DNA of 64,000 nt from Pecten maximus (GCF_902652985.1 NC_047020.1:28768001-28832000), one strand, 5' to 3'. Shown: positions 19,016 through 46,755, counted from the stretch's first letter. Notes: generated from the sequence alone by a model not told the origin. A program made the numbers and translations.

Positions 19016-19755
19016 CAACAGACAGGGTCATATGAGGACGGGTGTCAAGGAGACACCAACAGACAGGTTCATGTGAGGACGGATGTCAAGGAGACACCAA
19101 CAGACATGGTCATATGAGGACGGGTGTCAAGGAGACACCAACAGACAGGTTCATATAAGGATGGGTGTCAAGGAGACACCAACAGACAGGGTCATATGAA
19201 GACGGATGTCAAGGAGACACCAACAGACATGGTCATATGAGGACGGGTGTCAAGGAGACACCAACAGACAGGTTCATATAAGGATGGGTGTCAAGGAGAC
19301 ACCAACAGACAGGTTCATATGAGGACGGGTGTCAAGGAAACGCCAGCAGACAGATTCATGTGAGGACGGATGTCAAGGGGACACCAACAGACAGGTTCAT
19401 ATGAGGATGGGTGTCAAGGGGACACTTACAGACAGGTTCATGTGAGGGCGGATGTCAAGGAGACACCAACAGACAGGTTCAAATGAGGATGGGTGTCAAG
19501 GAGACACCAGCAGACAGATTCATATGAGGACGGGTGTCAAGAGGACACTTACAGATAGGTTCATGTGAGGACGGATGTCAAGGAAACGCCAGCAGACAGA
19601 TTCATGTGAAGACGGATGTCAAGGAGACACCAGCAGACAGATTCATGTGAGGACGGATGTCAAGGAGACACCAACAGGGTCATATGAGGACGGGTGTCAA
19701 GGAGACACCAACAGGGTCTTATGAGGACGGATGTCAAGGAGACACAAACAAGACC
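19016..19755 (+). repeat. 41-bp minisatellite (last units 37 bp), ~18 copies
   Basis: Unit gagacaccaacagacaggttcatatgaggacgggtgtcaag; reverse complement of the neighbouring array plus a 4-nt insertion. Confidence 0.93.
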
Positions 19756-19903
19756 CCTGAAAAATTGAGGATTTTCTTCCGGGTCTTTTATTTAGAGAGC
19801 ATTGATGAGACCAAAATAGATCTTCTGACACCATTAAACACTTAGTATGTTAAATCGATCCTCACTACTCGGTCTTTCTGTGCATTGTTTTCCTACTCTA
19901 TGT

Positions 19904-22470
19904 CTCTCCTTGACATCCGTCCTCATAAGACCCTGTTGGTGTCTCCTTGACATCCGTCCTCATAAGACCCTGTTGGTGTCTCCTTGACATCCATCCTCAT
20001 AAGACCCTGTTGGTGTCTCCTTGACACCCGTCCTCATATGACCCTGTTGGTGTCTCCTTGACACCCGTCCTCATAAGACCCTGTTGGTGTCTCCTTGACA
20101 TCCGTCCTCATAAGACCCTGTTGTTGTCTCCTTGACATCCGTCCTCATAAGACCCTGTTGGTGTCTCCTTGACACCCGTCCTCATATGAGGACGGGTGTC
20201 TCCTTGACATCCGTCCTCGTATGACCCTGTTGGTGTCTCCTTGACATCCGTCCTCATAAGACCCTGTTGGTATCTTCTTGACACCCGTCCTCATATGACC
20301 CTGTTGGTGTCTCCTTGACACCCGTCCTCATATGACCCTGTTGGTGTCTCCTTGACACCCCACCTCATATGACTCTGTAGGTGTCTCCTTCACACCCCAC
20401 CTCATAAGACCCTGTTGGTGTCTCCTTGTCATCCGTCCTCACAAGACCCTGTTGGTGTCTCCTTGACACCCATCCTCATATGACCCTGTTGGTGTCTCCT
20501 TGACATCCGTCCTCATAAGACCCTGTTGGTGTCTCCTTGACATCTGTCCTCATAAGACCCTGTTGGTGTGTCCTTGACACCCCACCTCATATGACCCTGT
20601 TGGTGTCTCCTTGACATCCGTCCTCATATGACCCTGTTGGTGTCTCCTTGACATCCGTCCTCATAAGACCCTGTTGGTGTCTCCTTGACATCCGTCCTCA
20701 TATGACCCTGTTGTTGTCTCCTTGACATCCGTCCTCATATGACCCTGTTGTTGTCTCCTTGACATCCGTCCTCATATGACCCTGTTGGTGTCTCCTTGAC
20801 ATCCGTCCTCATATGACCCTGTTGTTGTCTCCTTGACACCCGTCCTCATATTGCCCAGTTGGTGTCTCCTTGACACCCGTCCTCATATTGCCCAGTTGGT
20901 GTCTTCTTGACACCTTCTTCATATGGCCCAGTTGGTGTCTCCTTGACACCGTCCTCTTACGACATTGTTGGTGTCTCCTTGACATCCGTCCTCATATGAC
21001 CCTGTTGGTGTCTCCTTGACATCCGTCCTCATAAGACCCTGTTGGTGTCTCCTTGATATCCGTCCTCATAAGACCCTGTTGGTGTCTCCTTGACACCCGT
21101 CCTCATATGACCCTGTTGGTGTCTCCTTGACACCCGTCCTCACAAGACCCTGTTGGTGTCTCCTTGACACCCGTCCTCATATGACCCTGTTGGTGTCTCC
21201 TTGACATCCGTCCTCATAAGACCCTGTTGGTGTCTCCTTGACATCCGTCCTCATAAGACCCTGTTGGTGTCTCCTTGACACCCCACCTCATATGACCCTG
21301 TTGGTGTCTCCTTGACACCCCACCTCATATGACCCTGTTGGTGTCACATTGACCTCTTCCTCATATGACCCTGTTGTTGTTTCCTTGACACCTTCCTCAT
21401 ATGACCCAGTTGGTGTCTCCTTGACATCCGTCCTCATATGACCCTGTTGGTGTCTCCTTGACATCCGTCCTCATATGACCCAGTTGTTGTCTCCTTGACA
21501 TCCGTCCTCATATGACCCTGTTGTTGTCTCCTTGACATCCGTCCTCATATGACCCTGTTGTTGTCTCCTTGACATCCGTCCTCATATGACCCTGTTGTTG
21601 TCTCCTTGACACCCGTCCTCATATTGCCCAGTTGGTGTCTCCTTGACACCCGTCCTCATATTGCCCAGTTGGTGTCTCCTTGACACCTTCTTCATATGGC
21701 CCAGTTGGTGTCTCCTTGACACCGTCCTCTTACGACATTGTTGGTGTCTCCTTGACATCCGTCCTCATAAGACCCTGTTGGTGTCTCCTTGACATCCGTC
21801 CTCATAAGACCCTGTTGGTGTCTCCTTGACATCCGTCCTCATAAGACCCTGTTGGTGTCTCCTTGACACCCGTCCTCATATGACCCTGTTGGTGTCTCCT
21901 TGACACCCGTCCTCACAAGACCCTGTTGGTGTCTCCTTGACATCCGTCCTCATAAGACCCTGTTGGTGTCTCCTTGACACCCCACCTCATATGACCCTGT
22001 TGGTGTCTCCTTGACACCCCACCTCATATGACCCTGTTGGTGTCTCCTTGACACCCGTCCTCATATGACCCTGTTGGTGTCACATTGACCTCTTCCTCAT
22101 ATGACCCTGTTGTTGTTTCCTTGACATCTTCCTCATATGACCCAGTTGGTGTCTCCTTGACATCCGTCCTCATATGACCCTGTTGGTGTCTCCTTGACAT
22201 CCGTCCTCATATGACCCTGTTGTTGTCTCCTTGACATCCGTCCTCATATGACCCTGTTGTTGTCTCCTTGACACCCGTCCTCATATTGCCCAGTTGGTGT
22301 CTCCTTGACACCCGTCCTCATATTGCCCAGTTGTTGTCTCCTTGACACCGTCCTCTTACGACATTGTTGGTGTCTCCTTGACATCCGTCCTCATATGACC
22401 CTGTTGTTGTCTCCTTGACACGCGTCCTCATATTGCCCAGTTGGTGTCTCCTTGACACATGTCCTTATAA
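19904..22470 (-). repeat. 37-bp minisatellite, ~69 copies, inverted relative to 19016-19755
   Basis: Unit gtctccttgacatccgtcctcatatgaccctgttggt; variant blocks recur (ttacgacattg near 20957, 21730, 22356). Confidence 0.95.
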
Positions 22471-24156: not shown

Positions 24157-26500
24157 TGTACAACACTGATCAGACTTATCTATACAACACTGTTCAGACT
24201 TATCTTTACAACACTGTTCAGACTAATCTATACAACACTGTTCAGACTTATCTATACAACACTGTTCAGACTAATCTGTATAACACTGTTCAGACTTATC
24301 TATACAACCCTGTTCAGACTAATCCATACAACACTGTTCAGACAACTCTGTACAACACTGATCAGACTTATCTATACAACACTGTTCAGACTACTCTATA
24401 CAACACTGTTCAGACTAATCTATACAACACTGTTCAGACTTATCTATACAACACTGTTCAGACTTATCTATACAACACTGTTCAGACTTATCTATACAAC
24501 ACTGTTCAGACTTATCCATACAATACTGTTCAGACTAATCTATACAACACTGTTCAGACTTATCTATACAACACTGTTCAGACTTATCTATACAACACTG
24601 TTCAGACTTATCTATACAACACTGTTCAGACAACTCTATACAACACTGTCCAGACTAATCTACAACACTGTTCAGACTAATCCATACAACACTGTTCAGT
24701 CTAATCTATACAACACTGTTCAGACTTATCTACAACACTGTTCAGACTTATCTATACAACACTGTTCAGACAACTCTGTACAACACTGTTCAGACTAATC
24801 TACAACACTGTTCAGACTTATCTATACAACACTGTTCAGTCTAATCTATACAACACTGTTCAGACTTATCTACAACACTGTTCAGACTTATCTATACAAC
24901 ACTGTTCAGACTTATCTATACAACACTGTTCAGACTACTCTGTACAACACTGTTCAGACTAATCTGTACAACACTGTTCAGACTAATCTATACAACACTG
25001 TTCAGACTAATCTATACAACACTGTTCAGACTTATCTATACAACATTGTTCAGACTTATCTATACAACACTGTTCAGACTTATCTGTACAACACTGTTCA
25101 GACTTATCTATACAACACTGTTCAGACTTATCTATACAACACTGTTCAGACTTATCTGTACAACACTGTTCAGACTTATCCATACAACACTGTTCAGACT
25201 AATCTATACAACACTGTTCAGACTTATCTACAACACTGTTCAGACTTATCTATACAACACTGTTCAGACTTATCTATACAACACTGTTCAGACTACTCTG
25301 TACAACACTGTTCAGACTAATCTGTACAACACTGTTCAGACTAATCTGTACAACACTGTTCAGACTTATCTATACAACACTGTTCAGACTAATCTGTACA
25401 ACACTGTTCAGACTTATCTATACAACACTGTTCAGACTTATCTATACAACACTGTTCAGACTTATCTGTACAACACTGTTCAGACTTATCTATACAACAC
25501 TGTTCAGACTAATCTGTACAACACTGTTCAGACTTATCTACAACACTGTTCAGACTTATCTATACAACACTGTTCAGACTTATCTGTACAACACTGTTCA
25601 GACTTATCTATACAACACTGTTCAGACTTATCTATACAACACTGTTCAGACTTATCTATACAACACTGTTCAGACTTATCTGTACAACACTGTTCAGACT
25701 TATCTATACAACACTGTTCAGACTTATCTGTACAACACTGTTCAGACTAATCTATACAACACTGTTAAGTCTAATCTATACAACACTGTTCAGACTTATC
25801 CATACAACACTGTTCAGACTTATCCATACAACACTGTTCAGACTTATCTATACAACACTGTTCAGACTTATCTATACAACACTGTTCAGACTTATATGTA
25901 CAACACTGTTCAGACTTATCTACAACACTGTTCAGACTTATCTATACAACACTGTTCAGACTTATCTATACAACACTGTTCAGACAAATCTATACAACAC
26001 TGTTCAGACTTATCTATACAACACTGTTCAGACTTATCTATACAACACTGTTCAGACTAATCTATACAACCCTGTTCAGACTTATCTATACAACACTGTT
26101 CAGACTTATCTATACAACACTGTTCAGACTTATCTATACAACACTGTTCAGACTTATCTGTACAACACTGTTCAGACTTATCTATACAACACTGTTCAGA
26201 CTAATCTGTACAACACTGTTCAGACTAATCTATACAACACTGTTAAGTCTAATCTATACAACACTGTTCAGACTTATCTATACAACACTGTTCAGACTTA
26301 TCTATACAACACTGTTCAGACTAATCTGTACAACACTGTTAAGTCTAATCTATACAACACTGTTCAGACTTATCTATACAACACTGTTCAGACTTATCTA
26401 TACAACACTGTTCAGACTTATCTATACAACACTGTTCAGACTTATCTATACAACACTGTTCAGACAACTCTGTACAACACTGTTCAGAATAATTTGTATA
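24157..26500. repeat. 24-bp minisatellite, ~97 copies
   Basis: Unit tacaacactgttcagacttatcta with occasional 22-bp variants. Confidence 0.96.
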
Positions 26501-26849: not shown

Positions 26850-27382
26850 TATATGGTGACCTGCACACTGTATGGTTCAGTTGTCATGGTGAAAGGCGGC
26901 CTGTATGTTGACCAGTAGCCTGTACGGTTCATTTCTCCTATTGGAGGACAGCCTGTATGGTGACCTTAAGACTGTATGGTTCAGTTTTTTTTGGTGTATG
27001 GTGGCCTTTATGGTGATCTGTAGACTGTATGGTTAAGTTGTCTCTTTGAAGGGCCACCTGTATGTTGACCAGTAGCCTGTATGGTTTAGTTGTCATGGTG
27101 TAGGGTGGCCTGTATAGTGACCTGTAGGATGTATGGTTAAGTGTCCCTATTGGAGGGCAGCCTGTATGGTGACCTGTAGGATGTATGGTTCAGTGTCCCT
27201 ATTGGAGGGCAGCCTGTATGGTGACCTGTAGGATGTATGGTTCAGTGTCCCTATTGGAGGGCAGCCTGTATGGTGACCTGTAGGATGTATGGTTCAGTGT
27301 CCCTATTGGAGGGCAGCCTGTATGGTGACCTGTAGAATGTATGGTTCAGTGTCCCTATTGGAGGGCAGCCTGAATGGTGACC
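26850..27382. repeat. 52-bp tandem repeat overlapping the FAM114A2 stop codon and proximal 3' UTR, ~10 copies
   Basis: Minus-strand unit gtcaccatacaggctgccctccaatagggacactgaaccatacatcctacag; the first copy encodes VTIQAALQ*; copies diverge with distance from the gene. Confidence 0.9.
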
Positions 27383-30300
27383 TCTTGTAGACACGGCAGC
27401 AGTAACTGGAAAGCATCCTGTATGTATGTACTACTGTTTCCTGCCTGCAATACAAAGTTTGTCAGTTATTATATATCAAAATCTTTCTATACCGGGTCAA
27501 AGTTACACTCTTATACATGTAAAAGATTATATCTTGGTAATGTTGTAGTTGATACACCTATTATACATGTACTTACCTCCAGATAGATGTTGGTAACCAG
27601 AGTGTTGATGTCACTGCTATCCTCTTCACCCTCCTGATGAACATAAAGAAAAACTCTATTACTTCGACAGCTTCCAGACATTTTAACAAACCAGTGTCAG
27701 TACAATATTGTCAGTCCAGGACATACATATGGACATTCCAGTAAAGACAGACAGACAAAATTCAAAACAGGCAGACAAATGTCAGTCCTGGACAGACAGA
27801 AAACATTAATAACAAATCAACACCTCAAGCATGGAACACATCTCACATGTGTGGCCTCCAAGGCAATAAACACTGCAGATTATCCTTACAGATTATCAAT
27901 CAATGTTTGAAAGTCTCATGTGACCTGTCACCTCCAAACTAGGTCAAGGTCATTGAAGTTACATATTTACATAGCAGCATGTTTTCCTACTATGTTATGG
28001 TACAACATTAAACAAGAGGCCCAGAGGGCCTGTATCACTCACCTGGTTTATTTGAGCAAACATAAAGATAATGTTCATGTTATATTTGTTAATGTCTAAA
28101 ACAATGCTACATTGTATATGTATGAGTATGGCTTAAAGATCTCAACTGCTTCAAAGATATAACCTTGAAACGAAGTCAAGACTCAACATGATTGTGTTTA
28201 AAGAAGCCTATTAAGTCCCTTGGGGTGGGGAAAGACCCCTGGGCTTATTCTTACATCAGGCTTGTGTTCATCTCTTGATCTTAATTGTTTCAAAAATGCA
28301 AAAAGTCCTTTATAGCAATATAGTCAAATTGATCCCTTTTGCCCCGCCCTTGAGGCCCCTGGGGGATCAGCCCATCATTTGTATAACTTTAAATCCCAGC
28401 CACCTAGAGATGTTACCACTGAAATACCAATGTCATACATTGCTTAGGTCCAGAGAAGAAGTTGTTAATATCAATATTGCTAAAAGAACCACTTTTGGCC
28501 CAACCCCTCAGGCCCCTGCAGGGTCAGCCCCATCATTTGTATAAATTTGAATCCCAGGCACCTATGAATGCTACCACTGAAATATCAAAGCCATGCATTG
28601 CTTAGGTCCAGAGAAGAAGTCGTTAATATCGATATTACAAAATGGACCCCTTTTGACCCTGCCCCTCGGCCCCTGGGGAGTTAATCCAATCATATGTATA
28701 AATTTGAATCCTAGCCACCTAGGGATGCTACTGCTGAAATACCAATGTCATACATTGCTTAGGTCCAGAGAAGAAGTTGTTATTATCAATATTGCCAAAT
28801 GGACCCCTTTTGGCCCTGCCCCTCAGGCCCCTAAAGGGTCAGTCCTATCATTTGTACAAATTTGAATCCCAGCAACCTAGGGATGCTACCACTAAAATAT
28901 CAATGTCATGCATTGCTTAGGTCCAGAGAAGAAGTCGTTTATATCAATATTGCCTAATGGACCCCTTTTGGCCCTGCCCCTCGGGCCCCTAGGGGGTCAG
29001 TCCCATCATATGTAAAAATTTGAATCCCACCCACCTAGGGATGCTTCCTACCAAATTTGGTTAAATTCTGATCAGGGGTTCAGAAGAAGTCAATTGTGTT
29101 GACGGACGGATGGACGGACGGATGGACGGACGGACGGACGGACGGACGGACGGACGGACGAAGGACACCTGATGCCATGGTATGGCATAAGCTCACCTTG
29201 GTCCTTTGGACCAGGTGAGCTAAAAAAATGAATATTGTTTTATTAAGGATTTTTCAGACATGGATACTCACGGCCAGTGTGTTGAGGACAGATGTAAACT
29301 TCACGGACATAATTCCCACCTCCGTACACAAGACATTTGTCAGACTGCAAAAAATCCATTAGCATATAGTTACAATGATTCCAGCACTCTATTGAAGTGT
29401 TAGGTCCAAAATAAAAATTTGTGAATTTCTGCATTTCAAAATAATGAAGAGAATAGGGAAAGAACGAGAAAGAAACACTAAGGAAGAAAGGAAAAGGTGG
29501 AAGAGGATGGTAAGGATGATGTGGGATGAAGAAGACAAGAAAAAGAGGAAAAGACAGAAGAAAGGACGAAGAACTAAATGCAAAGTCTCACTTAGGTGTT
29601 GTACAATAAAGTCTAAATCGTATTTACATTCCCAATAATTAAGGTTAGAAATATGTTTAAAAACAAGATGTTATCAGGAGAATGATTACTCACTTAGAAA
29701 GACTGGTGGCTCTGTCTAAACACTGTTTATCAGACGGTTGGTTTAACAGAATTAGCTCCCCTGCTTTGTGAAACTGCTCCACAGACTTAGATGTCAGTTC
29801 CGCCAGTGATTGTATCGCCACCTGGTGGACAGCCTACAACAAAAGACAGACAACTTTTCCTAGAGGAGAAACAACTACCACACAAAGATACAATTTCTCT
29901 GCAATTTTTTTCAAACAACTGCGAACGTGTAGTTGAATTTGAAACAACCTTAGAATTGATACTATGAAACTGGGTAATATGGATTAATTGTTAAAGGAGT
30001 TGCATTTCATTAAATGTCAACACAAAGTACAAAGCTAACTTTGGAGATATTGAAAACTTAAACTTATGATAATATATCAATCTATATTTCATTAAAAAAT
30101 TAATTGACCTTTATAACTTATTGTCCATAAAAAAGATTTGACACCATGATTTTTTCTATTTTTCCAGTTCCGCTTTTACTTTTGGGTAAAAACTTTACAA
30201 CTCATTCTCGATAATTGTTGGAACATTTTTTTACATAATGGATATCCAAAGAACAATCACCTTGGGTTGGGCCTGCTCTTCCTCCCCTTCCTCCTTCGTG

Positions 30301-33300
30301 CAAAATTTACTAATACTTTGGCGGATTTTGTCCTGGGTCTGAAATAGATTTGATCATTCATATAATTCAGCCTTAATGTCTCTATAGAAATGAAGTTGTC
30401 TTTCTCAAGTCATTCTAATGTTATTCAGGTAACCAGCCTTTCTAAGGTCATCCTACTGTAGTTCAGCTAACCAACCTTTCTAAGGTCATCCTACTGTAGT
30501 TCAGGTGACAAACCTTTCTCAGGTCATCCTACCATAGTTCAGGTAACCAGCCTTCCTCGAGCCGTCTTACTGTACAGGTTGCAACTACTACCTGACAGAG
30601 ATCTGATAATTCTGATGTCAGCATGTTCTCACACACTTGTTCAAAACACGGACGGCAAATAAAAATTGAGAGTGTTTTACTTTGTTAATATGTGGTGAGT
30701 GCATCAATTATAAACATAACAATCTTACACTTCCATGACCATTCAAGTGAACATATTATCATAAAATTTTTACAGACTGCCAGATTTCACAGCCATGTAA
30801 TGACAGCCGTGAAAAGTAACGAGATTTAAGGTTAACATGAACATCCTAAACACTGAAAAATATTTTCAAATGTGCAGTTCTATGCTGGGTACACAGAATG
30901 TTACATTTCAATATAACAAGGAATTCTGACAATCATCCACTACACCTACAGTATATTAAAGTGGATAGAGAGTCAGAATCATTTGGAGGAGCACAGACAA
31001 ACCTTACTTACCCTGTTCAGTTTGCCTGGATCAGTACCCAGACTGAGGTTTGCCAAGTTATCAGTAACCAGCTTCACAAAATCTTGATCCTCTGGATCTT
31101 CTGGAACACATTGAACATACACCAATGAAAAGGAGGATTAATACAACAATATTATACTATAATGTCATGTAATCTAGGATTTTCTGGAACATATTGTCAT
31201 ACACCAATGAAAAGGAGGATTAATACAACAATACTATACTATAATATCATATATAATCTAACTGCTATTCTGAGAATATTCATTCTAAATATAATGTTCA
31301 AATAAAAACAAATCTACTAAAGACACATTGGACTATCAATATTACAGCAATAGTAAATCAAAATTTAAATCATTAATTGTACAAACCATCGTCATCATCC
31401 TCTTCATTTCTTTCAAACACCTGTTTGATCATGATGAGATCAGACTTTATGTCAGCGAGCGTATCAGCAGGCATGGATGTCAGTAGTGTCTGCACCTTCT
31501 TCTCACACTGATTGGCCAGGATCTCCAGAGCCTCCAAGTGGGCCAGACCTAGATATAGAAATTACAGACATAATCTCTAGTGTGTCCAAGTGGGCCAGGC
31601 CTAAATATAGAAATTAAATACAGAACATATAGTGTGTCCAAGTGGGCCAGGCCTAGATATAGAAATTACAGACAGAATCTCTAGAGTGTCCAAGTGGGCC
31701 AAGCCTAGATATAGAAATTACAGACAGAATCTCTAGAGTGTCCAAGTGGGCCAGGCCTAGATATAGAAATTACAGACAGAATCTCTAGTGTGTCTAAGTG
31801 GGCCAGGCCTAGATATAGAAATTACAGACAGAAACTCTAGTGTGACCAAGTGGGCCAGGCCTAGATATAGAAATTACAGACAATCTCTAGTGTGACCAAG
31901 TGGGCCAGGCCTAGATATAGAAATTACAGACAGAATCTCTAGAGAGTCCAAGTGGGCCAGGCCTAGATATAGAAATTACAGACAATCTCTAGTGTGACCA
32001 AGTGGGCCAGGCCTAGATATAGAAATTACAGACAGAATCTCTAGAGAGTCCAAGTGGGCCAGGCCTAGATATAGAAATGACAGACAGAATATCTAGTGTC
32101 CAAGTGGGCCAGGCCTAGATATAGAAATTACAGACAGAATCTCTAGAGTGTCTAAGTGGGCCAGGCCTAGATATAGAAATTACAGACAGAATCTCTAGAG
32201 TGTCCAAGTGGGCCAGGCCTAGATATAGAAATTACAGACAGAATCTCTAGTGTGACCAAGTGGGCCAGGCCTAGATATAGAAATTACAGACAGAATCTCT
32301 AGTGTCCAAGTGGGCCAGGCCTAGATATAGAAATTACAGACAGAATCTCTAGAGTGTCTAAGTGGGCCAGGCCTAGATATAGAAATTACAGACAGAATCT
32401 CTAGAGAGTCCAAGTGGGCCAGGCCTAGATATAGAAATTACAGACAGAATCTCTAGAGTGTCCAAGTGGGCCAGGCCTAGATATAGAAATTACAGACAGA
32501 ATCTCTAGTGTGTCTAAGTGGGCCAGGCCTAGATATAGAAATTACAGACAGAAACTCTAGTGTGACCAAGTGGGCCAGGCCTAGATATAGAAATTACAGA
32601 CAATCTCTAGTGTGACCAAGTGGGCCAGGCCTAGGTATAGAAATTACAGACAGAATCTCTAGAGAGTCCAAGTGGGCCAGGCCTAGATATAGAAATTACA
32701 GACAATCTCTAGTGTGACCAAGTGGGCCAGGCCTAGATATAGAAATTACAGACAAATCTCTAGAGAGTCCAAGTGGGCCAGGCCTAGATATAGAAATGAC
32801 AGACAGAATATCTAGTGTCCAAGTGGGCCAGGCCTAGATATAGAAATTACAGACAGAATCTCTAGAGTGTCTAAGTGGGCCAGGCCTAGATATAGAAATT
32901 ACAGACAGAATCTCTAGAGTGTCCAAGTGGGCCAGGCCTAGATATAGAAATTACAGACAGAATCTCTAGTGTGACCAAGTGGGCCAGGCCTAGATATAGA
33001 AATTACAGACAGAATCTCTAGTGTCCAAGTGGGCCAGGCCTAGATATAGAAATTACAGACAGAATCTCTAGAGTGTCTAAGTGGGCCAGGCCTAGATATA
33101 GAAATTACAGACAGAATCTCTAGAGAGTCCAAGTGGGCCAGGCCTAGATATAGAAATTACAGACAGAATCTCTAGTGTCCAAGTGGGCCAGGCCTAGATA
33201 TAGAAATTAAAGACAGAATCTCTAGAGTGTCCAAGTGGGCCAGGCCTAGATATAGAAATTACAGACAGAATCTCTAGTGTGTCCAAGTGGGCCAGGCCTA

Positions 33301-36300
33301 GATATAGAAATTACAGACAGAATATCTAGTGTGTCCAAGTGGGCCAGGCCTAGATATAGAAATTACAGACAGAATCTCTAGAGTGTCCAAGTGGGCCAGG
33401 CCTAGATATAGAAATTACAGACAGAATCTCTAGAGAGTCCAAGTGGACCAGGCCTAGATATAGAAATTATAGACAGAATCCCTAGAGTGTCCAAGTGGGC
33501 CAGGCCTAGATATAGAAATTACAGACAGAATCTCTAGTGTGTCCAAGTGGGCCAGGCCTAGATATAGAAATTACAGACAGAATCTCTAGAGTGTCCAAGT
33601 GGGCCAGGCCTAGATATAGAAATTACAGACAGAATCTCTAGAGAGTCCAAGTGGACCAGGCCTAGATATAGAAATTACAGACAGAATCTCTAGAGAGTCC
33701 AAGTGGACCAGGCCTAGATATAGAAATTATAGACAGAATCTCTAGAGTGTCAAAGTGGGCCAGGCCTAGATATAGAAATTATAGACAGAATCTCTAGAGA
33801 GTCCAAGTGGACCAGGCCTAGATATAGAAATTACAGACAGAATCTCTAGAGAGTCCAAGTGGACCAGGCCTAGATATAGAAATTATAGACAGAATCTCTA
33901 GAGTGTCCAAGTGGGCCAGGCCTAGATATAGAAATTATAAGACAGAATATCTAGAGTGTCCAAGTGGGCCAGGCCAAGATTTCAGTTTTCTGAGAAACAA
34001 AAACCAACATGGGTACTGGTACGAAGCGTTGAACCGCTCACCACGGGCTTTAATACATATAAGTAATATCTGCTTACCCTACAATTACCCATAATGTACA
34101 GCCCACGTAGTTTGTCTGTCACCGACAATACAGACTGAGTATTCTATCTTACACAAATAATAGAGACCTGACTACTAATCTGACATCTAAACAGGTACCT
34201 GAATCTCTACTGTAAAGACTGACATTTGATGTAGATGCATTTCTGTGTTTGAGTGAATTTGCAAAAATATGTGACACCAAAATTTGGCTTGTTATGATAA
34301 AAATACTTAAATAAGACCTGACAGGACTGAAAAGATACCAAGAAAGATCCACTTATTTATATGCCCTCATTTGAGAAAAATATTGAAACACCCCAATCGA
34401 TAGAATCTCTAAACTTGCCTTGATATTCATCAAACATGAACCCAAAGTGGGCCTTCCGTGCATCATCGGATTCTTTTTCCTGCTCCATACGCTTGGCTGA
34501 ATCTTCCTTAGCATCTCGCAGAATCTGGGAAAGGTTAGGCTTATCTCCCCTCTGAAACAACACTTCCTTTGTCTTGTGAAGTCCGGGGTCGTGGTCTTTG
34601 ATGACATCAAATGTCTTTTTACCAATGGTTTCCAGGACATCCAAACTGCCAGTCACCAAGGCATTACTCTGTAAAATGCAAGTAAGTATGTCACCTAATT
34701 AGAAATACCAGTATATTAATGCAAAGTACATAACGAAATAAAAAAAATCCTTTCTGGGAGATTGCACACATCTTAAATTTCATGCCTCATTTATTCATTC
34801 ATAGACCTCCTTTTAGAAACGAATATTTCAAAAAATATATTTTGGCTACTCTTTCTTGTGGGCTTATTGGAGAAAATGTGAACATCGAGGAGGTTTACAG
34901 ATGATTTATACTTGAGAATAAGGTAACAATTTGAAAGCCTCCAGAAGAGAAGGTATGGAAAGTATGACATGGGTTTTGGAGTAATGACAGTGCAGTGTCT
35001 ACTGTCATGCTATGAACACAATCACTCTCTACTGATGTGTATTTTACTTTCTGCACACTATTTACATATATATATGTCTGTAGGTTTCATTCCATTCACA
35101 AATACTCTAATTCCAAACTTAGAGCAATCATTAAAAATTAACGAGACCCTGTGACACAAACAATGGAGTAGTCTCCTAAACTTTCAACAAGAAACTGAGG
35201 GCATACTATGTGATTATTACATATATATTGTACATGTATATATTTATAATTAAAAGTAAATAATGTCCTTGTGATGGATGTACATAATAATAAAAAAAAA
35301 CATAATAAAAAAAAACATAATAAAAAACACAAACCATAAAATCACAAGCGCTTTCACATGCTTTGTATATTTATTTCTCTGAGTGTCTCATAAGCCTTTT
35401 ATAGGCTAGGTGTAAATTCTAAATTTTGATAATTCTGTATAATTATAATACGTATATATGATGTTTTATTTAAAATTGACATGTGACACTTTGATTAAAT
35501 ATATTGTATTGTATGTATTGTAATAGACATCCATCAAGATCTGTCTTTGTGAAGAGCCTATTTAAAATGATTCACAGTAATAAGCCTGTATGTATGACCG
35601 TTCACTGTTCTGTAGGGTAAGGGTCTGTTTCTACTGACCGTGTTCTGTAGGGTAATGGTCTGTTTTTACTGACCGTGTTCTGTACCATGTGAGTAGTGTT
35701 CTGTACTACAGAGGTCAAGCTGGACATCCCCCAGGATGAGAACCAGTTACTTCCAGAACCTTGGTCTCCCCCTTCAGGATTCATCACATTGTCCTCTTTC
35801 TTTTTCTCTTCTTGTTTTTCTCCTTTTTCCTTCTGATCAACCTCTTCTTGGTCTGTTAAAAAAAACGAATGATTATACTACCAGGTACAATAGTATCATA
35901 GTAATTCACTGTTAGTATCATAGTAATTCACTGTTAGTATCATAGTAATTCAACGTTAGTATTATAGTAATTCACTGTTAGTATCATAGTAATTCACTGT
36001 CAGTATCATAGCAATTCACTGTTAGTATCATAGTAAATTACTGTTAGTATCATAGAAATTCACTGTTAGTATCATAGTAATTCACTGTTAGTATAGTAAT
36101 TCACTGTTAGTATAATAGTAATTCACTGTTAGTATCATAGTAATTCACTGTTAGTATCATAGTAATTCACTGTCAGTATCATAGCAATTTACTGTTAGTA
36201 TCATAGGAATTCACTGCTAGTATCATAGTAATTCACTGTAAGTATCATAGTAATTCACTGTTAGTTTCATAGTAATTCACTGCTAGTATCATAGTAATTC

Positions 36301-39300
36301 ACTGTAAGTATCATAGTAATTCACTGTCAGTATCATAGTAATTCACTGTTGGTATCATAGTAATTCACTGTTAGTATAATAGTAATTCACTGTTGGTATC
36401 ATAGTAATTTACTGTTAATATCACAGTAATTAACTGTTAATATCATAGTAATTCACTGTTAGTATCATAGTAATTCACTGTTAGTATCATAGTAATTCAC
36501 TGTTATATAGTACATGTATCATAGTAATTCACTGTTGGTATCATAGTATTCACTGTTAGTATCATAGTAATTCAGTGTTATATAGTACATGTATCATAGT
36601 AATTCACTGTTATATAGTACATGTATCATAGTAAGTCACTGTTATATAGTACATGTATCATAGTAATTCACTGTTGGTATCATAGTATTTCACTGTTAGT
36701 ATCATAGTATTTCACTGTTAGTATCATAGTAATTCACTGTTAGTATCATAGCAATTCACTGTTAGTATCATAGTAATTCACTGTTAGTATCATAGCAATT
36801 CACTGTTAGTATCATAGCATTTCATTGTTAGTATCATAATAATTCACTGTTAGTATCATAATAATTCACTGTTAGTATCATAATAATTCACTGTTAGTAT
36901 CATAGTAATTCACTGTTAGTATCATAGAAATTCACAGTTACCCATGGCTAGAACAGACATATATTATCATAAATGTATCAGAAATCCTATATCTTACTTT
37001 CTCTGTCGATGGTGGTGTTTTCTGGGGCCTCTGATTCCTCCCGAGACTTCCTCTTCATTTCGGCCAGCTCCTCTGGTGACGGCGCCCCCATACTGGTCTC
37101 TACTGCATCCACAAGTGTATTGAACTTGTCCTCTGTCACAGAAATACATGTTCAGTATTGTCAGATATCATACAATACTAATATATATATATATATGTAA
37201 ATGTATGTGTAACTGGTAATTTCAATGTTGATTTGACCACTATTACAAGTACATATTAATATATATCATACCCAACAAAATTATAAATCAGAAAGAAAAA
37301 TGAAAAATTCATGGAAAATGACATTTACACTTTTTTCTCTAAAATCCTCCTGAGTCCTCCAATAAATAATGTTGTAAAGTAGGGATGTTCATCTAATATC
37401 CACTGTCTAATAGCCAGTTATCTCCCTTTATAGTGTTAATCCCTTTTCACTTCCAAAAAGATAATTATGATTGTTTTGAAATAATAGATACTGGTCAAAT
37501 ATAGTCTGCGGTAGAGGATATACGACCTTACTAAAAGTAACTAATTTAATGTTTGTGTTGTATATACATATACAGAGGTATATATGTATCAGTGTTGACT
37601 TTGGCAGCAAAACCTGAGTGAGTTACATGATGTTACACAAGCTCTACATACCAACATGGCCAGCTAAGGACTGGAACCAGCCACCTTTAGCCTGCTCCTC
37701 TTGGCGATCTTCTGGGTTATCTCCCTTATTTTCTGTCACAGACTTTTTATTTTCCTCCTGATCATCATGTTCTGAGTCTGCAAAGTTATTAAAAAAAACA
37801 TTATCAGTGTCATGGTTTTCTTGTATACATATCTTCTTGTCATGACAGCAAATCAGGACATATGTTATTTCAACTTATGAAACACAATCTCCTTACATAC
37901 AAAAAGAACATTCAATGAGCCTAGATAATAGCAATTGCAATTTTGTAGTTGCACATATTTTAAATCTAAATGCTTTTTCAGGAATGAATGTAAAGATACA
38001 TGTGGATGAAAAGACTGAAGTTTACATTTTCAGGAAACAGATCACTACCATATAATAATATTTTAAATGTCACTTCAATCTTTCATATCCTTAGAAACAA
38101 TTTACACCAGCATCTCATGATATATCTTACTTTCTCTGTCGATGGTGGTGTTTTCTGGGGCCTCAGATTCCTCCCGAGACTTCCTCTTCATTTCGGCGAG
38201 CTCCTCTGCTGACGGCGCCCCCATACTGGTCTCTACTGCATCCACTAGTGTATTGAACCCGCCCTCTACAAAAGTAATACTGTTAGAGGCTCTCCTGAAA
38301 ACACTAGGTCTGTAGATACACATCAAATGTACTTTGTGAAATGAAATACATTTAATGATGCTGACAAATTTTGCTGCTATCAAACATATACAAATACCTC
38401 AAACAATGTTGAAGTAGGAGACTTATAAATTACATGTATACCACATGCGTATACCTAAATATCAAAGAATAGGACTTAAGTACATTGTATTTGATACTGT
38501 ACATACCAACTTGACTGGTGAAGGTTGACACTGAATGGGACGCTACATTCATCAGAGATGATCCCCAGTTACCCCAGGCACTCCAGCCACCAGATGCAGA
38601 GGACTGCAATGTAGTAAATAATACAAACTGTTAATAATCAAGTATTTAATATCATCATCATCATCATCATTTCAAAATAATTTCCTCCTGTAATATATAC
38701 TTTCATATAAGAGATCCCAGAGGGATCTTGGCACCCACTATTTATGTAAGTATGTATTTATTGCATTGATGCAAGCTATAGATATTTTTCTTCTTTCATG
38801 GATAACAACATGTTCTAAAACTTATTCTGCTGTGTTTGAAATAATCCTTTTAAAGATAAAATCATTCAATCTATGGACTAAAACAGTGAATTGTAACATG
38901 ATGATATATCAAAATTCATAATAGATGCTAGAATATGTCTAAGCAGGCTCAAGATATGGCATGCACAGCTAGGACCAAAGCTGAATGTTTGTCTTATGTT
39001 TTAAGAACATCACTATTGTTGTTCTTGAGGAATAGCAGTAACAAACTACAAATTTCAAAATTCTAAAAGGCTGCTGGCGAGTATCTGATGAAGCTCAAGC
39101 ATGTATCGAGTAAATCTCATGTTAACAAAGACATCCATTCATTATAGCTCTTATTTAAGGAAAAGTGCCAACAAACTTGATTCATCATTCAAAATTCAAA
39201 ATGGCCACTGGAGGACATAGCAAATATATGACCTATCTCAAAAAATGATGTGAAAAACTAAATGCACAACTAAGCTCCTAAAGTTCAAGAGAATCACCAT

Positions 39301-42085: not shown

Positions 42086-43931
42086 ATGGCTGGCGTTTAC
42101 GAGGTTTGTTTCTGTTTTGTGAAAATATTACGATAATCCATGTTTTATGTAATGTTAAGTGATAAATATACATGCGATTCCTTACTCCTGTACTCATGAA
42201 ATTTTGATGGGACTCACAGAATTTCTTTAACTAGTAAGATTTAACATTGCTGGACTTATTGTTTTTTAGCAATGTACAGTACAGTTTAGTTATATTGTTA
42301 CTGTACTACCTACTAGTGGTTCAGTACGTATCGTAGTGATCATGAATCACAGTGAATGCAGTCTTGTATAGTTTATTGAATGCCTGACATCGGTACATTT
42401 TCCAAAAGTATGTCCACTGTCTTAAATTCTCCTAAAGTCCGCTAGAACAGCGCGGATACTTCACTGAACCTTTGACGAAATATAAATAAATACAATTCTG
42501 CATGGGTAAAATTAGGTGCAAACGCGTGTACGGCTGCTGAACAAATTGACAGGTTGAACCAGAATTATTAGCAACAAATCCATACTCCAACTGGTGTATG
42601 TAGGTGAGAATTTGCATATTATACACAAGTTAGTGGCATGGGAAGGTTTTCCCTAACCTGATTATTTGTTTTAACATGTCTGTTATCGATAAAACAATCA
42701 ATGTAAAATAAATAAGAATTAAAATAAAAACCTTAAAACAAATGATGCATTTCAAAAGGAAATAAAATTACTATCATGGGAAGTAACTTGTATATAATCT
42801 CATTGATGCGTTTATATTGTGACATTGGAAAGTCACCAATTTGAGCTACGTATACCTCGCTTGCAGTCAGAATTTTCTGACAATCCTTACTACGTAGATA
42901 CACATACAAGGAAGCTTTAAAAGCGATATATATTAACATCAGAACCATTTGGATTACCTTGCTTGTTGAAGAAAATGGCCCTCACCCATCAAATACCTGT
43001 TTATACACTCATATTTCTCATGATCAGTTGGCAATCAGTAAGTGAAATGTTTCTACTTTTGTTTTAACAGTTTTGGTATTTTACCGATTTTCATAGCTTT
43101 TTATTATAGTGACTGAAATCACCATTTTCAAATGATTAAGAACCAGCAAAATTTTTTCCAAAAACCAGAACAGTTACAACAAAAGTTGTTATAAGAAAAA
43201 GAGGATATGCATGGTTATCAATAAATCATGCAAAAATCCATAATTTTGATGTTTTATATTGAGCAAACTTGATGATGAATACATGTTTAGATATAAACTT
43301 ACCATAATTGTAGGCTGCAAAATTCTTGCTCACAAACATTTATCATTTTGCTACTCTTGAATGGTTATATATATATATTTTCAGAAAAGTGTAACAGACT
43401 TCAGGAGAAAATGGGACAAAGAGGAATACGAGAAAATGGCTAAGGAGAAGTTGGAAGCAGAGCAGATGGCTTTGCTGGAGAAGGAACTAAAGGAACCACC
43501 AGTGAAAAGAGAACTTCTCCAACCCCGCGAGTACAAGGTAGATACAAAATGTACTTATGGTACTCTGGTTTTATTAAGTCAATTGAAATGTAGGGCGACG
43601 AAGACATTTGGAAAGTGATATGGTCAACATCAAGACCTTTATAAGAAATATTCTATTTTTGGTGCAATATGGATTCAGATTTGTTTTACGCTTGTTGTTA
43701 CTTTCTGTTCCAGGTTGATCTTGATTCAAAACTGGGAAAGTCTCAGGTGATCACAAAGACAACACCAGCCTCCCAACAAGGAGGGTAAGTGATCTAAGAA
43801 GCAGTATATATACAAGACACTGGACATTTTTAATAGTCTCACTTTGTAATTTACAGAATACGTATGAAGGTGCAGTGTATCAATCTGCTGTTTTATCACC
43901 TGAATAGGCACATTTAATGCCTATGGTTACT

Positions 43932-43964
<33 letters not shown>

Positions 43965-46755
43965 TAGTTGTAAATATGCAATTCCCATTTCTTGATTGGT
44001 TAATTCTAAATATCATCACTTTGCTCAAACATTTTGTCAACCCCAAATCAAGACTATGGGTTGAAATAACATATTCAATCCAGTGAATCCAAATAAAGTA
44101 AATGCTACAAATAACTTAATTTTACTCCAAAGCATTATTTTCCATCTGAAATCTTGCAATTAGTAATTTGAATACTGAAGATGAATTTTAAATAGTTACA
44201 TATATATATTGATCATTCTCTTTTCTATCCAGTCTATCCATTGATTGAGACTGAGAACTTTGTGAAGTGAAAATGTTGAGAAAGTCATATAATAAAACAG
44301 TTATGAGCCTGTTTTCCTCTGAATGTGATGACATTTTTACCCTTTAAAGAGATGTTTCCAAATATCAACTTTCAAATGTCAGTAATATAAATTTGCAGGG
44401 GGAAATATCTTTTTTTCCAGGGCCAATAATCATTTTATTCACCTAAAACAGGTGGATATCTCTATGATATTGAAATTTGAATGTGCAGAGTGTATAAAAA
44501 ATACATGATTTTGCCAGGGTGTTGATAGCATAAAAGATTTAAGACAGAATTTTTCACTTAATATTTGTGAATACAAAGTACCATATTTGACCACAAATAA
44601 GCCCCCACCACCACTATGGCAAATTAATGGATTAAGTCCCCCCCCCCCCCCCCCCCCCTCTAAAAACGATCTTCAAATGTTATCAACTGAGTATCTAACA
44701 TGACTCTGGTTTTCAACTGCGATTATCAATTTGATTGGAAAAATACATTTTCTCATGTCATTCTTAATTGTGTGAAATATGTCATTTCTATTTAAACATT
44801 ATAACACCTCGAGTCTATGTTGCTGATCATTTTGTGATGTCACAATAGACCATGTTTAAAAATTTTACATGTTAAATACCCTGTTATATGACATGGGAGT
44901 GTTGTGGATAAATATTGACTTAGTACAATGCAATTTACCTGATTTTTACTACTTTGTAGATATTACTGCAATGTGTGTGATTGTGTGGTGAAGGACTCGA
45001 TCAATTTCCTGGATCATATCAATGGAAAAAAACGTAGGTATTAAAGCTCCTTGATACACCAATACTGAGTATTAACTTGTAGATTTCATAACTCCTGATT
45101 ATTTCTGCTCTTTAGATTGCAGTATTTTTTCTGCCTATATAATTGGGTCCAAATTTTAAGGCCTAGGGCTACGGTAATTCTAACTGTTGTGTGCTGTTTA
45201 TTTTTCCCGATAAGTCATCAAAATTCACAAAATCTTTAAAGCTGGTATTTTTTTATATGATGATATGCAATCCAGCAATTTGTGAGCACTGCTTTTCTCA
45301 TATCAAAATTTTGCAATTTTGAACTTAAAGCATGTAAAATTCTTATTTGTCAATTGTATATTTCTTATATGAGATCTGTAACCAGTGGTTTATCAGGTGT
45401 GAAACATGAACATCACTTTAAATATGCTCATCATGTTATTGATTTATATACATGTAATTATATATTTTGTAATTCAAAATTGTAACGTGCGAATGCAAAG
45501 CCAAACCCATACATCATGAGAATTTTATTTTGTCATTATTTAATAAAATGCTCTTCTCTTGTTTTTATCTTGAAAGGCAAAAGCCAACATTTTATCATAC
45601 AATGGAAGAGCTCTGTTCTGTATGAGAACAGTTAAACTTATTTTTATCCAAAAGAAAGCCTTGATGTGATTCAAATCAACTTGTGTTTCAGATCAGAGAA
45701 ATTTGGGCATGTCAATGAAGATTGAGAGATCATCATTAGATCAGGTTAAAAAAAGGTTTGAGATGAATGTAAAAAAACAGGAAGAGAAAAAGAAAGAGTA
45801 TGACTTTGAAGAGAGAATGAAGGAGCTCAAGGAAGAGGTTTGTAGTCACATGATGGCTATTTGCACAACTAGGTTACATGATATGTCAAAGTTTCACTGA
45901 AAAAACACAAGAGTTTTAGTTGATAGGATGGTCTTGAAAAACTTGTAAAATAAAATTACTACAAAGTGACTGTAAACAACATGTTATTTGAAAAGTAAAG
46001 ACCACTTTGTTAATGCTGTATTCAAGGTTAAAGTGGGAGGGTAATGCAGTGGTAACAATCAAAAGTCAAGTCATTATCATTTCAAAAAGCTCTAAGAATA
46101 GTACATACACAATGTTTATGGTTAGTTTTAGTAGAATAAAACAGAAACACAAATGTTTATTTCTACCTATAATCTGTTCTTATTGGTTCTTAATTATATA
46201 ATGTATCATACACAGTTGTTGATCTGAAGGTTGAAGATTTTAATTTCCTCTCATAATTACTAAGTCAGTATATAATTTTTTTGTTATATAGATTGACAAA
46301 GTGTAAATGTTTGTGTAGATAACATTGAAATATAAAAATCAGTCAAAAAGACAATAGGTAAGTGACAATAAAATTACACATAAAATTTGGAAGTTTGAAG
46401 GGGAATCAGATTCATCATTCATCTCAAATCAAAAAGTCAAAGTGGTGTGTTCGTGTTGGATTTTATGGATAAGAATTATGATGCACAGTGATTGATTCAC
46501 ATAATTGTCTGCTTGTCCTGTTGTAGGATATCAAAGAGTCCTTTAGTTTTCTGTATAAACTTGTGGAGAAATTTTCATGGAATGCAAATTCATTTAATGT
46601 TATAGGAGGAGAAGCAGAAAGCTTACAGAAAGGAGAAGAGGAAGGAAAGAAAAAGGAAAGCTGATGACTCAACAGGACTGAATATCAATGTAGATCCAGA
46701 CATGGCTGCTGTGATGGGATTCTCTGGGTTTGGTACAACTAAACCTCCCACATAA
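42086..46755 (+). CDS. ZMAT2: Zinc finger matrin-type protein 2 (Snu23 orthologue, spliceosomal B complex), 6 exons, 203 aa
   Basis: Exons 42086-42103, 43385-43537, 43714-43784, 44960-45033, 45692-45837, 46606-46755 (612 nt). Motifs [59 protein letters not shown]. The 18-nt first exon is the least certain. Confidence 0.95.

What the first reader, a model, noticed from the sequence alone, without database searches (positions are those of the whole stretch)
31387..34419. About 47 tandem decoy 3' splice sites upstream of a real FAM114A2 exon
Seen: the 52-bp unit on the coding strand reads TGTAATTTCTATATCTAG/GCCTGGCCCACTTGGACACTCTAGAGATTCTGTC, a copy of the true junction TGTAATTTCTATATCTAG/GTCTGGCCCACTTGGAGGCTCTGGAGATCCTGGC (decoy GLAHLDTLEILS vs real GLAHLEALEILA). 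About 2.4 kb of this 2.87 kb intron is such copies. The real site is the last one transcribed and reads AG/GT, while the decoys I read are AG/GC (one lacks the AG). Using a decoy would frameshift or reach a stop within two units. Inference: the spliceosome must skip dozens of near-identical acceptors, probably by exon definition from the downstream donor, so array length could tune productive splicing and NMD.
Basis: partly seen in the sequence, partly recalled or inferred. Interest (0 to 1): 0.85.

Follow-up and report, generated by a model that had tools for sequence, protein, structure and literature searches.

The report
Repeated splice-acceptor copies in scallop intron
A scallop gene carries 46 near-perfect tandem copies of one of its own intron-exon junctions inside the intron, a natural test of how cells pick the right splice site, but nothing here shows that the copies do anything.

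Summary
On the minus strand, a 52-bp unit is repeated 47.7 times (31517-33980). This gives 46 pseudo-acceptors plus the authentic one (first exon base 31548) and fills 85% of a 2870-nt intron. Thirty-six pseudo-sites are identical to the real site from -20 to +1. All 46 have C at +2 where the real site has T, and all lead to a stop within 12-34 codons.

The gene is not vertebrate. The window is Pecten maximus (king scallop) and the gene is FAM114A2-like. The exon start (GL.HLEALE.L) is conserved across animals, so the repeat was copied from the junction.

Such arrays recur in this gene. Ylistrum balloti has 28 copies of this intron's donor, 3 (+2) of its acceptor, and 46 of another donor. Argopecten irradians has 3 copies of another acceptor. 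P. maximus has a second duplicated acceptor. Annotated models always use the outermost site.

AG|GC is the real acceptor in two orthologues, so +2 cannot be the discriminator.

My best reading is a young, unstable minisatellite that is tolerated because exon context selects the last acceptor. Expression tuning through NMD is untested. The closest precedents are the human F7 and ABCA7 donor-side VNTRs.

The parts
34419..34668 (-). Upstream coding exon (end of the DUF719 domain, ...FGFMFDEYQ + first base of the Gly codon); ends in phase 1
   Evidence: Translation. Pfam DUF719 E=2.8e-26, profile positions 104-180 of 182. 100% match to the P. maximus models.
34413..34418 (-). 5' splice site of the intron, a GC donor (AAG|GCAAGT)
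   Evidence: Sequence. The only in-frame junction; the nearby GT at 34414 gives a stop. M. yessoensis has the same GC donor, whereas A. irradians and Y. balloti have GT.
33981..34412 (-). Unique 5' part of the intron. It ends in a strong-looking pyrimidine tract plus CAG (AG at 33991-33990) just before the array.
   Evidence: Sequence. Not alignable with the A. irradians intron beyond about 45 nt.
31549..33980 (-). Intronic part of the 52-bp minisatellite: one partial copy without AG, then 46 pseudo-acceptor units (18 nt of intron end + 34 nt of exon start)
   Evidence: TRF, pattern search, unit table, stop codons, identity to the real site.
32354..33049 (-). Upstream copy of a roughly 14-unit block duplicated within the array
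   Evidence: Local alignment with 32330-31634: 692 of 697 identical, one gap (first seen).
31634..32330 (-). Downstream copy of the same roughly 14-unit block
31387..31548 (-). Authentic exon (162 nt, GLAHLEALEILANQCEKK...DDDD). Its first 32-34 nt form the last repeat unit. The acceptor AG is at 31550-31549.
   Evidence: Translation. Conserved motif in 110 homologues. P. maximus models.
31495..31504 (-). Purine-rich GAGAAGAAGG (+45 to +54 of the exon), just beyond the duplicated segment and absent from every pseudo-exon; a candidate splicing enhancer
   Evidence: Sequence comparison of real and pseudo +1..+60. The enhancer role is inference from the general GAR-type enhancer consensus (my knowledge).
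31385..31386 (-). Downstream 5' splice site (GATG|GTTTGT) that closes the authentic exon
   Evidence: Sequence.
31094..31250 (-). 82-bp x 1.9 duplication that copies the acceptor of the next exon. The real AG is at 31102-31101 (exon starts at 31100). The pseudo AG is at 31185-31184.
   Evidence: TRF. Sequence.

Best explanation
What it is (shown). This is a lineage-specific minisatellite in an intron of the Pecten maximus FAM114A2-like gene. It arose by tandem duplication of a 52-bp segment spanning the intron/exon boundary: the last 18 nt of the intron plus the first 34 nt of the exon. It then expanded, most recently by duplication of a roughly 14-unit block. The 3'-most copy is still attached to the rest of the exon and remains the working acceptor. 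The other 46 copies are intronic pseudo-acceptors.

How it works (inferred). The pseudo-sites are ignored, or used only at a low level, because acceptor choice depends on exon context rather than on the acceptor sequence alone.
- Only the last copy is followed by real exon sequence, including a purine-rich GAGAAGAAGG at +45.
- Only the last copy has a 5' splice site at a normal exon distance (162 nt).
- Each pseudo-exon runs after 34 nt into the next pyrimidine tract and has no plausible donor.

On this reading the array is a tolerated, probably length-variable by-product of the very high minisatellite birth rate in scallop introns, not a purpose-built regulator. Any splicing to a pseudo-site gives a truncated reading frame and, if mollusc NMD follows the usual rule, an unstable mRNA.
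For: Array anatomy.

The exon start is ancestral. GL[AVS]HLEALE[IM]LS follows ...FD[DE][YF]Q in 110 homologues from molluscs to vertebrates. The same junction is in the NCBI models of four scallops.

The acceptor window cannot separate real from pseudo. 36 of 46 pseudo-sites are identical at -20..+1.

Real and pseudo sequences diverge after +34, and the purine-rich motif is present only in the real exon.

The array is young and dynamic. Two 697-nt blocks are 99.3% identical.

The sister species in the gene tree, A. irradians, has a 615-nt intron without any array.

Junction-spanning arrays arose independently, with different units, elsewhere in the same gene:
- Y. balloti has 49-bp x28 (donor), 66-bp x3+2 (acceptor) and 62-bp x46 (donor).
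- A. irradians has 95-bp x3 (acceptor).
- P. maximus has 82-bp x2 (acceptor).
In every case the annotated model uses the outermost site.

There is experimental precedent that tandem identical pseudo-sites stay silent. In the human F7 intron 7 VNTR only the most upstream donor is used (PMC1557585).

The assembly rests on 65.9x PacBio reads (PMC7191990).
Against: - I could not examine any RNA data for P. maximus, so silence of the pseudo-sites is not shown. The gene models may simply report the only productive isoform.
- The two nearest pseudo-sites would give exons of 214 and 266 nt, well within normal exon size. Exon length alone therefore does not exclude them.
- By my recollection, classical duplicated-site experiments often favour the acceptor nearest the donor, which here would be a pseudo-site.
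- The enhancer role of the purine-rich motif is assumed from a consensus defined in other animals.
- The human ABCA7 VNTR shows that array length can change splicing (PMC5954066), so neutrality is not guaranteed.
- The real site carries a derived T at +2 while the copies keep the C seen in the outgroups. This could be a small compensatory strengthening of the real site.
Confidence: 0.6

Rival explanations
1. The pseudo-acceptors are used at an appreciable rate. They divert transcripts into frameshifted, NMD-sensitive products, or stall the intron as splicing decoys, so that array length sets the output of the gene.
For: - 36 pseudo-sites match the real acceptor exactly at -20..+1.
- All lead to early stops.
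- The donor is a GC donor, a class that by my recollection is linked to alternative splicing.
- In human ABCA7, longer donor-side VNTR alleles change splicing and lower functional transcript (PMC5954066).
- The array roughly doubled recently, so length variation is likely.
Against: - No transcript evidence could be reached.
- The NCBI models show only the productive junction.
- In F7 the identical pseudo-sites are silent.
- Comparable arrays of different unit, side and size sit in the same gene in related species, and none is present in this intron in A. irradians. This fits neutral turnover better than a conserved regulatory device.
Confidence: 0.25
2. RNA structure hides the pseudo-acceptors, or loops the array out, so that only the last acceptor is accessible.
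For: The predicted probability that the AG is unpaired is higher for the real site (0.062) than the pseudo-site mean (0.016). The real site ranks 2nd of 47.
Against: - Absolute accessibilities are low everywhere, and the real site ranks only 38th of 47 for the 20-nt tract.
- Unit and two-unit folds are no more stable than dinucleotide shuffles, with z-scores from +0.9 to -0.5.
- The F7 authors also found no structural explanation.
Confidence: 0.04
3. Assembly artefact. The array, or its length, is a product of misassembly of repetitive long reads.
For: wtdbg2 assemblies of noisy CLR reads can mis-size tandem arrays (my knowledge). Two blocks are almost identical.
Against: - The array is 2.4 kb, far below PacBio read length, at 65.9x coverage.
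- Units carry ordered variants and 50/51/52-nt length variants, not a uniform stutter.
- Arrays of the same nature occur in three independent assemblies of other scallops.
Confidence: 0.04
4. Stepwise (recursive) removal. The donor first splices to a pseudo-acceptor, and the regenerated junction then acts as a new donor until the real site is reached.
For: Joining the upstream exon to a pseudo-site regenerates CAAG|GC, the same first two intron bases as the real GC donor.
Against: The regenerated site reads GCCTGG. It matches the donor consensus only at +1 and +5, whereas GC donors normally need a near-perfect match elsewhere (my knowledge; the real one is GCAAGT). Recursive sites are defined by AG|GT, which only the real site has.
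Confidence: 0.02

Closest known systems
Human F7 intron 7 37-bp VNTR (Borensztajn et al. 2006, PMC1557585)
   Same: An intronic minisatellite whose edge unit spans an exon-intron boundary, so the authentic splice site lies next to a row of identical pseudo-sites. Only the outermost site is used. The pseudo-sites are potentially functional.
   Different: F7 duplicates the donor (5' side) with 5-9 copies and has been tested experimentally. Here the acceptor is duplicated (branch region, pyrimidine tract and AG) in 46 copies, and the authentic site is the last one transcribed rather than the first. A 5'-to-3' scanning rule therefore cannot explain the choice.
Human ABCA7 intron 18 25-bp VNTR (De Roeck et al. 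2018, PMC5954066)
   Same: A junction-touching intronic VNTR with many copies (12-427). Pseudo-site use gives a frameshift and a premature stop. Array length correlates with altered splicing.
   Different: It is on the donor side, and only the GT of the donor belongs to the unit. The effect is documented in patients. No length or expression data exist for the scallop array.
Junction-spanning arrays in the orthologous scallop genes
   Same: The same gene, and in Y. balloti the same intron. Units of 49-95 bp copy a splice junction, and annotated models use the outermost copy.
   Different: They have different unit lengths and breakpoints and sit on different sides (donor x28 and x46, acceptor x3 in Y. 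balloti; acceptor x3 in A. irradians), so their origins are independent. None is shared with P. maximus.
Expanded CAG repeats acting as serial splice acceptors (bioRxiv 10.1101/2023.10.16.562581, seen)
   Same: A tandem repeat that offers many acceptor AGs in a row.
   Different: Those are 3-nt units that create acceptors by composition. They are not copies of a gene's own acceptor with its tract and exon start. I read only the abstract.
NAGNAG tandem acceptors
   Same: Duplicated acceptor AGs that compete for the same donor.
   Different: They are spaced 3 nt apart, keep the reading frame, and occur as two copies. Here the spacing is 52 nt, use would frameshift, and there are 47 copies.

Membership tests
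Junction-spanning intronic minisatellite with tandem pseudo splice sites (F7 IVS7 type) | Head-to-tail tandem array inside an intron | tested here: met
   TRF period 52, 47.7 copies, 93% matches.
Junction-spanning intronic minisatellite with tandem pseudo splice sites (F7 IVS7 type) | The edge unit contains the authentic exon-intron boundary | tested here: met
   The last unit carries the acceptor at 31550-31549 and the first 32-34 nt of the exon. The junction is confirmed by homologues.
Junction-spanning intronic minisatellite with tandem pseudo splice sites (F7 IVS7 type) | Pseudo-sites identical or nearly identical to the authentic site | tested here: met
   36 of 46 are identical at -20..+1; all differ at +2.
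Junction-spanning intronic minisatellite with tandem pseudo splice sites (F7 IVS7 type) | Only the outermost (authentic) site is used physiologically | not testable with these tools
   Gene models use it, but no RNA reads or transcript fragments of P. maximus were reachable.
Junction-spanning intronic minisatellite with tandem pseudo splice sites (F7 IVS7 type) | Copy number varies between individuals (VNTR) | not testable with these tools
   Only one assembly holds the locus. A 99.3% identical internal block duplication suggests instability.
GC-AG intron | GC at +1/+2 of the intron, an otherwise strong donor consensus, and AG at the 3' end | tested here: met
   AAG|GCAAGT at 34418 and AG at 31550-31549. 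It is the only junction that keeps the frame. The GC donor is shared with M. yessoensis.
FAM114 / DUF719 protein family | Match to Pfam PF05334 above the gathering score, and orthology to named FAM114A2 proteins | tested here: met
   93.2 bits against a cut-off of 22.4 for the upstream exon. Exon 1 is 232 of 232 identical to P. maximus 'FAM114A2-like'. Named homologues are listed.
Recursive splice site (ratchet point) | Acceptor immediately followed by a regenerated GT donor (AG|GT) with a usable donor consensus | tested here: not met
   All 46 pseudo-sites read AG|GCCTGG.
NAGNAG tandem acceptor | Two acceptor AGs 3 nt apart, in frame | tested here: not met
   Spacing is 50-52 nt, and every pseudo-site leads to a stop.
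Decoy exon promoting intron retention | An intronic pseudo-exon with both an acceptor and a donor that engage the flanking sites unproductively | tested here: inconclusive
   The units have an acceptor. The only GT motifs (TCT|GTAATT, TCT|GTCTGT) lack G at -1, and each departs from the donor consensus at +3 to +5, by inspection of the unit. Intron retention itself could not be measured.

The most novel reading that the evidence does not exclude
Minisatellites anchored on exon edges may be a systematic feature of scallop genes rather than a one-off.

- In this one gene across four species, about 7 of 14 independent arrays that do not look transposon-derived include a splice junction or the stop codon. 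A crude random-placement model expects about 20%.
- The stop-codon array is shared by all four species.
- Up to 46 identical donors or acceptors are bypassed in favour of the outermost site on both sides of introns.

If this is real, one possibility is that the copy under selection keeps re-seeding its array. Scallops would then offer a natural, two-sided system for testing how splice sites are chosen among identical competitors, possibly with array length modulating gene output.
Probability: 0.2. Interest if true: 0.75.

Novelty: new variant of a known kind. Interest (0 to 1): 0.5.

Why it matters
How the spliceosome picks one site among equally good candidates is still argued. The best natural model so far, the F7 VNTR, concerns 5-9 donors and led to a 5'-to-3' scanning rule. 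Here the authentic acceptor is the last of 47 near-identical sites to be transcribed. Scanning from the 5' side and 'first come, first served' both predict the wrong site, which puts the weight on exon context.

A close relative carries the mirror case, with 28 and 46 tandem donors, in the same gene. Both directions can therefore be compared in one system.

If pseudo-sites turn out to be used, the array would be a length-variable brake on expression. If they are silent, it is a striking demonstration of how robust exon definition is. Either way, it warns annotators and RNA-seq aligners about junctions inside repeats.

Tried and rejected
1. RNA structure masking. Local-folding accessibilities and folds of one and two units give no structure beyond shuffles.

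2. +2 T/C as the discriminator. Rejected, because AG|GC and AG|GG are authentic acceptors in the orthologues.

3. Recursive splicing and NAGNAG. The defining features are not met.

4. Exon derived from the repeat rather than the reverse. Rejected, because the exon start is conserved across Metazoa.

5. Homology of the unique intron part with the A. irradians intron, to reconstruct the ancestral acceptor. Not alignable beyond about 45 nt. The founder event therefore stays open. One untested idea is that the partial first copy, preceded by a good pyrimidine tract and reading TTGG, is the disabled original acceptor.

6. Transcript evidence. A search with the upstream exon for short protein fragments found no P. 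maximus entries. The P. maximus protein clusters have a single NCBI member each.

7. Other individuals or species. An exact unit search of metagenome contigs gave 0 hits. Only one contig carries the P. maximus protein.

8. Known RNA families in the gene. None found.

9. Literature. Four searches aimed at precedents found donor-side precedents but no acceptor-side array.

10. Search policy. Exons were searched singly by reference.
Full report
**1. The observation**

Read on the minus (coding) strand, the region shows a long run of one 52-nt unit. Tandem Repeats Finder reports a single array at 31517-33980 with period 52, 47.7 copies and 93% matches. A 33-nt pattern across the junction matches 47 times with at most 3 mismatches, all on the minus strand inside the array. 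Shuffles give none.

Unit-by-unit extraction gives 46 pseudo-acceptors, with first pseudo-exon bases from 33921 to 31600, and the authentic acceptor at 31548. Units are 50, 51 or 52 nt long. At the 5' edge a partial copy reads TTGG where the others read TAGG.

The intron runs from 34418 to 31549 and is 2870 nt. The array makes up 85% of it.

When each pseudo-site is read in the phase set by the upstream exon, every one of the 46 reaches a stop after 12-34 codons. Thirty-six pseudo-sites are identical to the real site from -20 to +1.

**2.

The intron begins GC, not GT. The junction AAG|GCAAGT at 34419/34418 is the only one that keeps the frame.

The gene is not vertebrate.
- The upstream exon matches Pfam DUF719, the FAM114 family.
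- An exhaustive profile search with that exon found as best hit a 753-aa protein of the bay scallop Argopecten irradians.
- A wider search named FAM114A2-like proteins of Pecten maximus, Ylistrum balloti and Mizuhopecten yessoensis.
- Exon 1 of the window is 232 of 232 identical to the P. maximus protein.
- The P. maximus locus fetched from GCA_902652985.1 is identical to window 50556-17303 over all 33,254 bases.

That assembly was built from 65.9x PacBio reads (PMC7191990). A 2.4-kb array is therefore unlikely to be an artefact.

**3. Direction of copying**

In 110 homologues from molluscs, annelids, echinoderms, amphioxus and fishes, the residues after ...FD[DE][YF]Q are G-L-[AVS]-H-L-E-A-L-E-[IM]-L-S. 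The exon start is therefore ancient, and the repeat was copied from the junction, not the reverse.

The P. maximus, A. irradians, Y. balloti and M. yessoensis models all join ...FDEYQ to GL[AS]HLEALEIL. The pseudo-exons have drifted at the Glu-Ala codons (GAGGC to GACAC, GACTC or GTCAC), where all orthologues agree with the real exon.

At +2 the copies keep the C seen in Y. balloti and M. yessoensis, A. irradians has G, and the real P. maximus site has T. This position is the synonymous third base of the Gly codon. AG|GC and AG|GG serve as authentic acceptors in the relatives. The AG/GT-versus-AG/GC contrast therefore cannot be what marks the real site. At most it is a small derived improvement.

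**4. Age and dynamics**

Two blocks of about 14 units, 33049-32354 and 32330-31634, are 692 of 697 identical. More than half of the array thus stems from one recent block duplication. The end units are the most divergent.

In a single-gene tree, P. maximus and A. irradians are sisters (support 100/99). A. irradians has a 615-nt intron with no array in either of its two assembled copies. The array is therefore most simply specific to the Pecten lineage.

The introns cannot be aligned beyond the first 45 nt, so the founder event cannot be reconstructed.

**5. The wider pattern**

This is the main new result. The same intron in Y. balloti carries:
- a 49-bp unit repeated 28 times that copies the donor junction (real donor first, then 27 pseudo-donors, 17 of them with the same GTAAGT);
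- a 66-bp unit that copies the acceptor junction three times at the acceptor (real site last), with two more copies displaced upstream.

Other cases in the gene:
- Two introns further on, Y. balloti has 46 tandem copies of another donor junction in a 62-bp unit.
- A. irradians has three copies of the acceptor and first 58 nt of a later exon in a 95-bp unit, with the real site last.
- P. maximus itself has a second case, an 82-bp duplication of the acceptor of the very next exon.
- M. yessoensis has a 36-bp array of about 65 units in the same intron that touches neither junction.
- In all four species the last codons plus the stop codon are the first unit of a 52-55-bp array.

Units and breakpoints differ between species, so the junction arrays arose independently. 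Everywhere the annotated model uses the outermost copy, which removes the whole array.

Arrays make up roughly 38% of the P. maximus gene and 63% of the Y. balloti gene (my sums).

With units of 50-95 bp, about 29 exon edges and about 8 kb of non-repeat intron, a random founder duplication would span an edge about 20% of the time. I count about 7 edge-spanning arrays among 14 independent arrays that do not look transposon-derived. This is suggestive (binomial about 0.02). It is also post hoc, from one gene and by hand. I treat it as a lead, not a result.

**6. How it most likely works**

What is shown:
- The acceptor window cannot distinguish real from pseudo.
- Real and pseudo sequences part after +34. 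The real exon goes on to a purine-rich GAGAAGAAGG at +45 and a donor 162 nt downstream.
- Each pseudo-exon runs into the next pyrimidine tract and contains no credible donor.

What is inferred:
- The acceptor is chosen as part of an exon-definition unit, and the pseudo-sites are bypassed.

What speaks for tolerance rather than function:
- The turnover of such arrays between species, and their absence from this intron in the sister species.
- The experimental finding that the identical pseudo-donors of the human F7 VNTR are silent although functional (PMC1557585).

- The human ABCA7 VNTR, where length alters splicing (PMC5954066).
- The GC donor.
- The fact that exons of 214 and 266 nt from the two nearest pseudo-sites would be of normal size.

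RNA structure does not explain the choice. Recursive splicing does not fit, because the regenerated junction reads GCCTGG.

**7. Comparison and novelty**

Junction-spanning intronic VNTRs with tandem pseudo splice sites are known on the donor side (F7, ABCA7). Four searches aimed at precedents found no acceptor-side array.

The acceptor-side case is not trivial. The authentic site is the last one transcribed, so the 5'-to-3' scanning rule proposed for F7 cannot apply. I file it as a new variant of a known kind.

**8. Limits**
- No RNA data, population data or second assembly could be reached.
- NMD rules in molluscs are assumed from other animals (my knowledge).
- Exons were searched one by one by reference. 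No model joined from window exons was sent to any search tool.

**9. Verdict**
- The most likely reading is a young, tolerated minisatellite copied from the acceptor junction (confidence 0.6).
- The expression-tuning reading is possible (0.25).
- Interest is 0.5. It is raised by the recurrent, two-sided pattern in scallops and lowered by the lack of any functional evidence and by the very high repeat background.

Noticed in passing
window 34413-34418 (minus strand); L003 5398-5403: The intron with the array is a GC-AG intron (AAG|GCAAGT). M. yessoensis shares the GC donor, while A. irradians and Y. balloti have GT at the same position.
   Followed up: partly
window 33990-34010 (minus strand): Just upstream of the array there is a much better-looking pyrimidine tract plus CAG (TTGGTTTTTGTTTCTCAG, AG at 33991-33990) than the real acceptor has. 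Using it would give a stop after two codons. The partial first repeat copy that follows reads TTGG instead of TAGG. This may be the disabled original acceptor, but that is untested.
   Followed up: partly
window 31094-31250: An 82-bp x 1.9 duplication copies the acceptor and first bases of the next exon. The pseudo AG is at 31185-31184 and the real AG at 31102-31101.
   Followed up: yes
L002 9380-10764, 11010-11137, 12535-12731, 13076-15930 (Ylistrum balloti): In the orthologous gene there are 28 tandem copies of the donor junction of the same intron, 3+2 copies of its acceptor junction, and 46 tandem copies of the donor junction two introns further on. Annotated models use the first donor and the last acceptor.
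   Followed up: yes
L001 12359-12635 and 15040-15316; L004 13470-13746 (Argopecten irradians): A 95-bp unit x 2.9 copies the acceptor plus 58 nt of the exon encoding LTNVLCTEVGILSVKF, with the real site last. The chromosome copy has this array twice, which suggests a roughly 2.7-kb segmental duplication.
   Followed up: partly
window 26852-27383; L002 19465-21239; L003 11938-13621; L001 18577-19508: The last codons (...VTIQAALQ) plus the stop codon are the first unit of a 52-55-bp array that continues into the 3' UTR. Homologous arrays stand at this spot in all four scallops, so this one looks old or recurrently renewed.
   Followed up: partly
window 36993-37151 and 38126-38314 (minus strand): There are two copies of the exon encoding FNTLVDAVETSMGAP..EELAEMKRKS. 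Both are present in the 768-aa P. maximus isoform and in the other scallops' proteins. The 681-aa isoform X3 lacks one set.
   Followed up: partly
window 28303-29045; L001 16325-17564; L004 9622-11262; L002 11224-12296: Roughly 157-bp satellite arrays recur in different introns of the gene in three species. In Y. balloti the array splits the 66-bp acceptor array. They may be repeats associated with mobile elements; they were not classified.
   Followed up: no
window 19016-22457, 24159-26488, 35891-36940: Further large minisatellites: 41-bp x18 and 37-bp x69, 24-bp x98, and 22-bp x48. The last lies in the intron upstream of the exon at 35674-35853, 35-52 nt from either splice site.
   Followed up: no
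window 8172-8632: A 51-bp x 9 array (98% matches) whose unit contains CTAG|GTAAC twice, which is donor-like. I did not check whether it copies an exon edge of a neighbouring gene.
   Followed up: no
window 42086-46755 (plus strand): The head-to-head neighbour is a 203-aa zinc-finger protein (zf-C2H2_jaz / zf-met, ZMAT2-like by my reading of the ORFs). The same neighbour is present in A. irradians and Y. balloti.
   Followed up: partly
L001 versus L004 (A. irradians): The assembly holds two copies of the gene, one on the chromosome and one on an unplaced 71.5-kb contig. The proteins are 753 and 757 aa and the repeat content differs. This is probably an uncollapsed haplotype.
   Followed up: no
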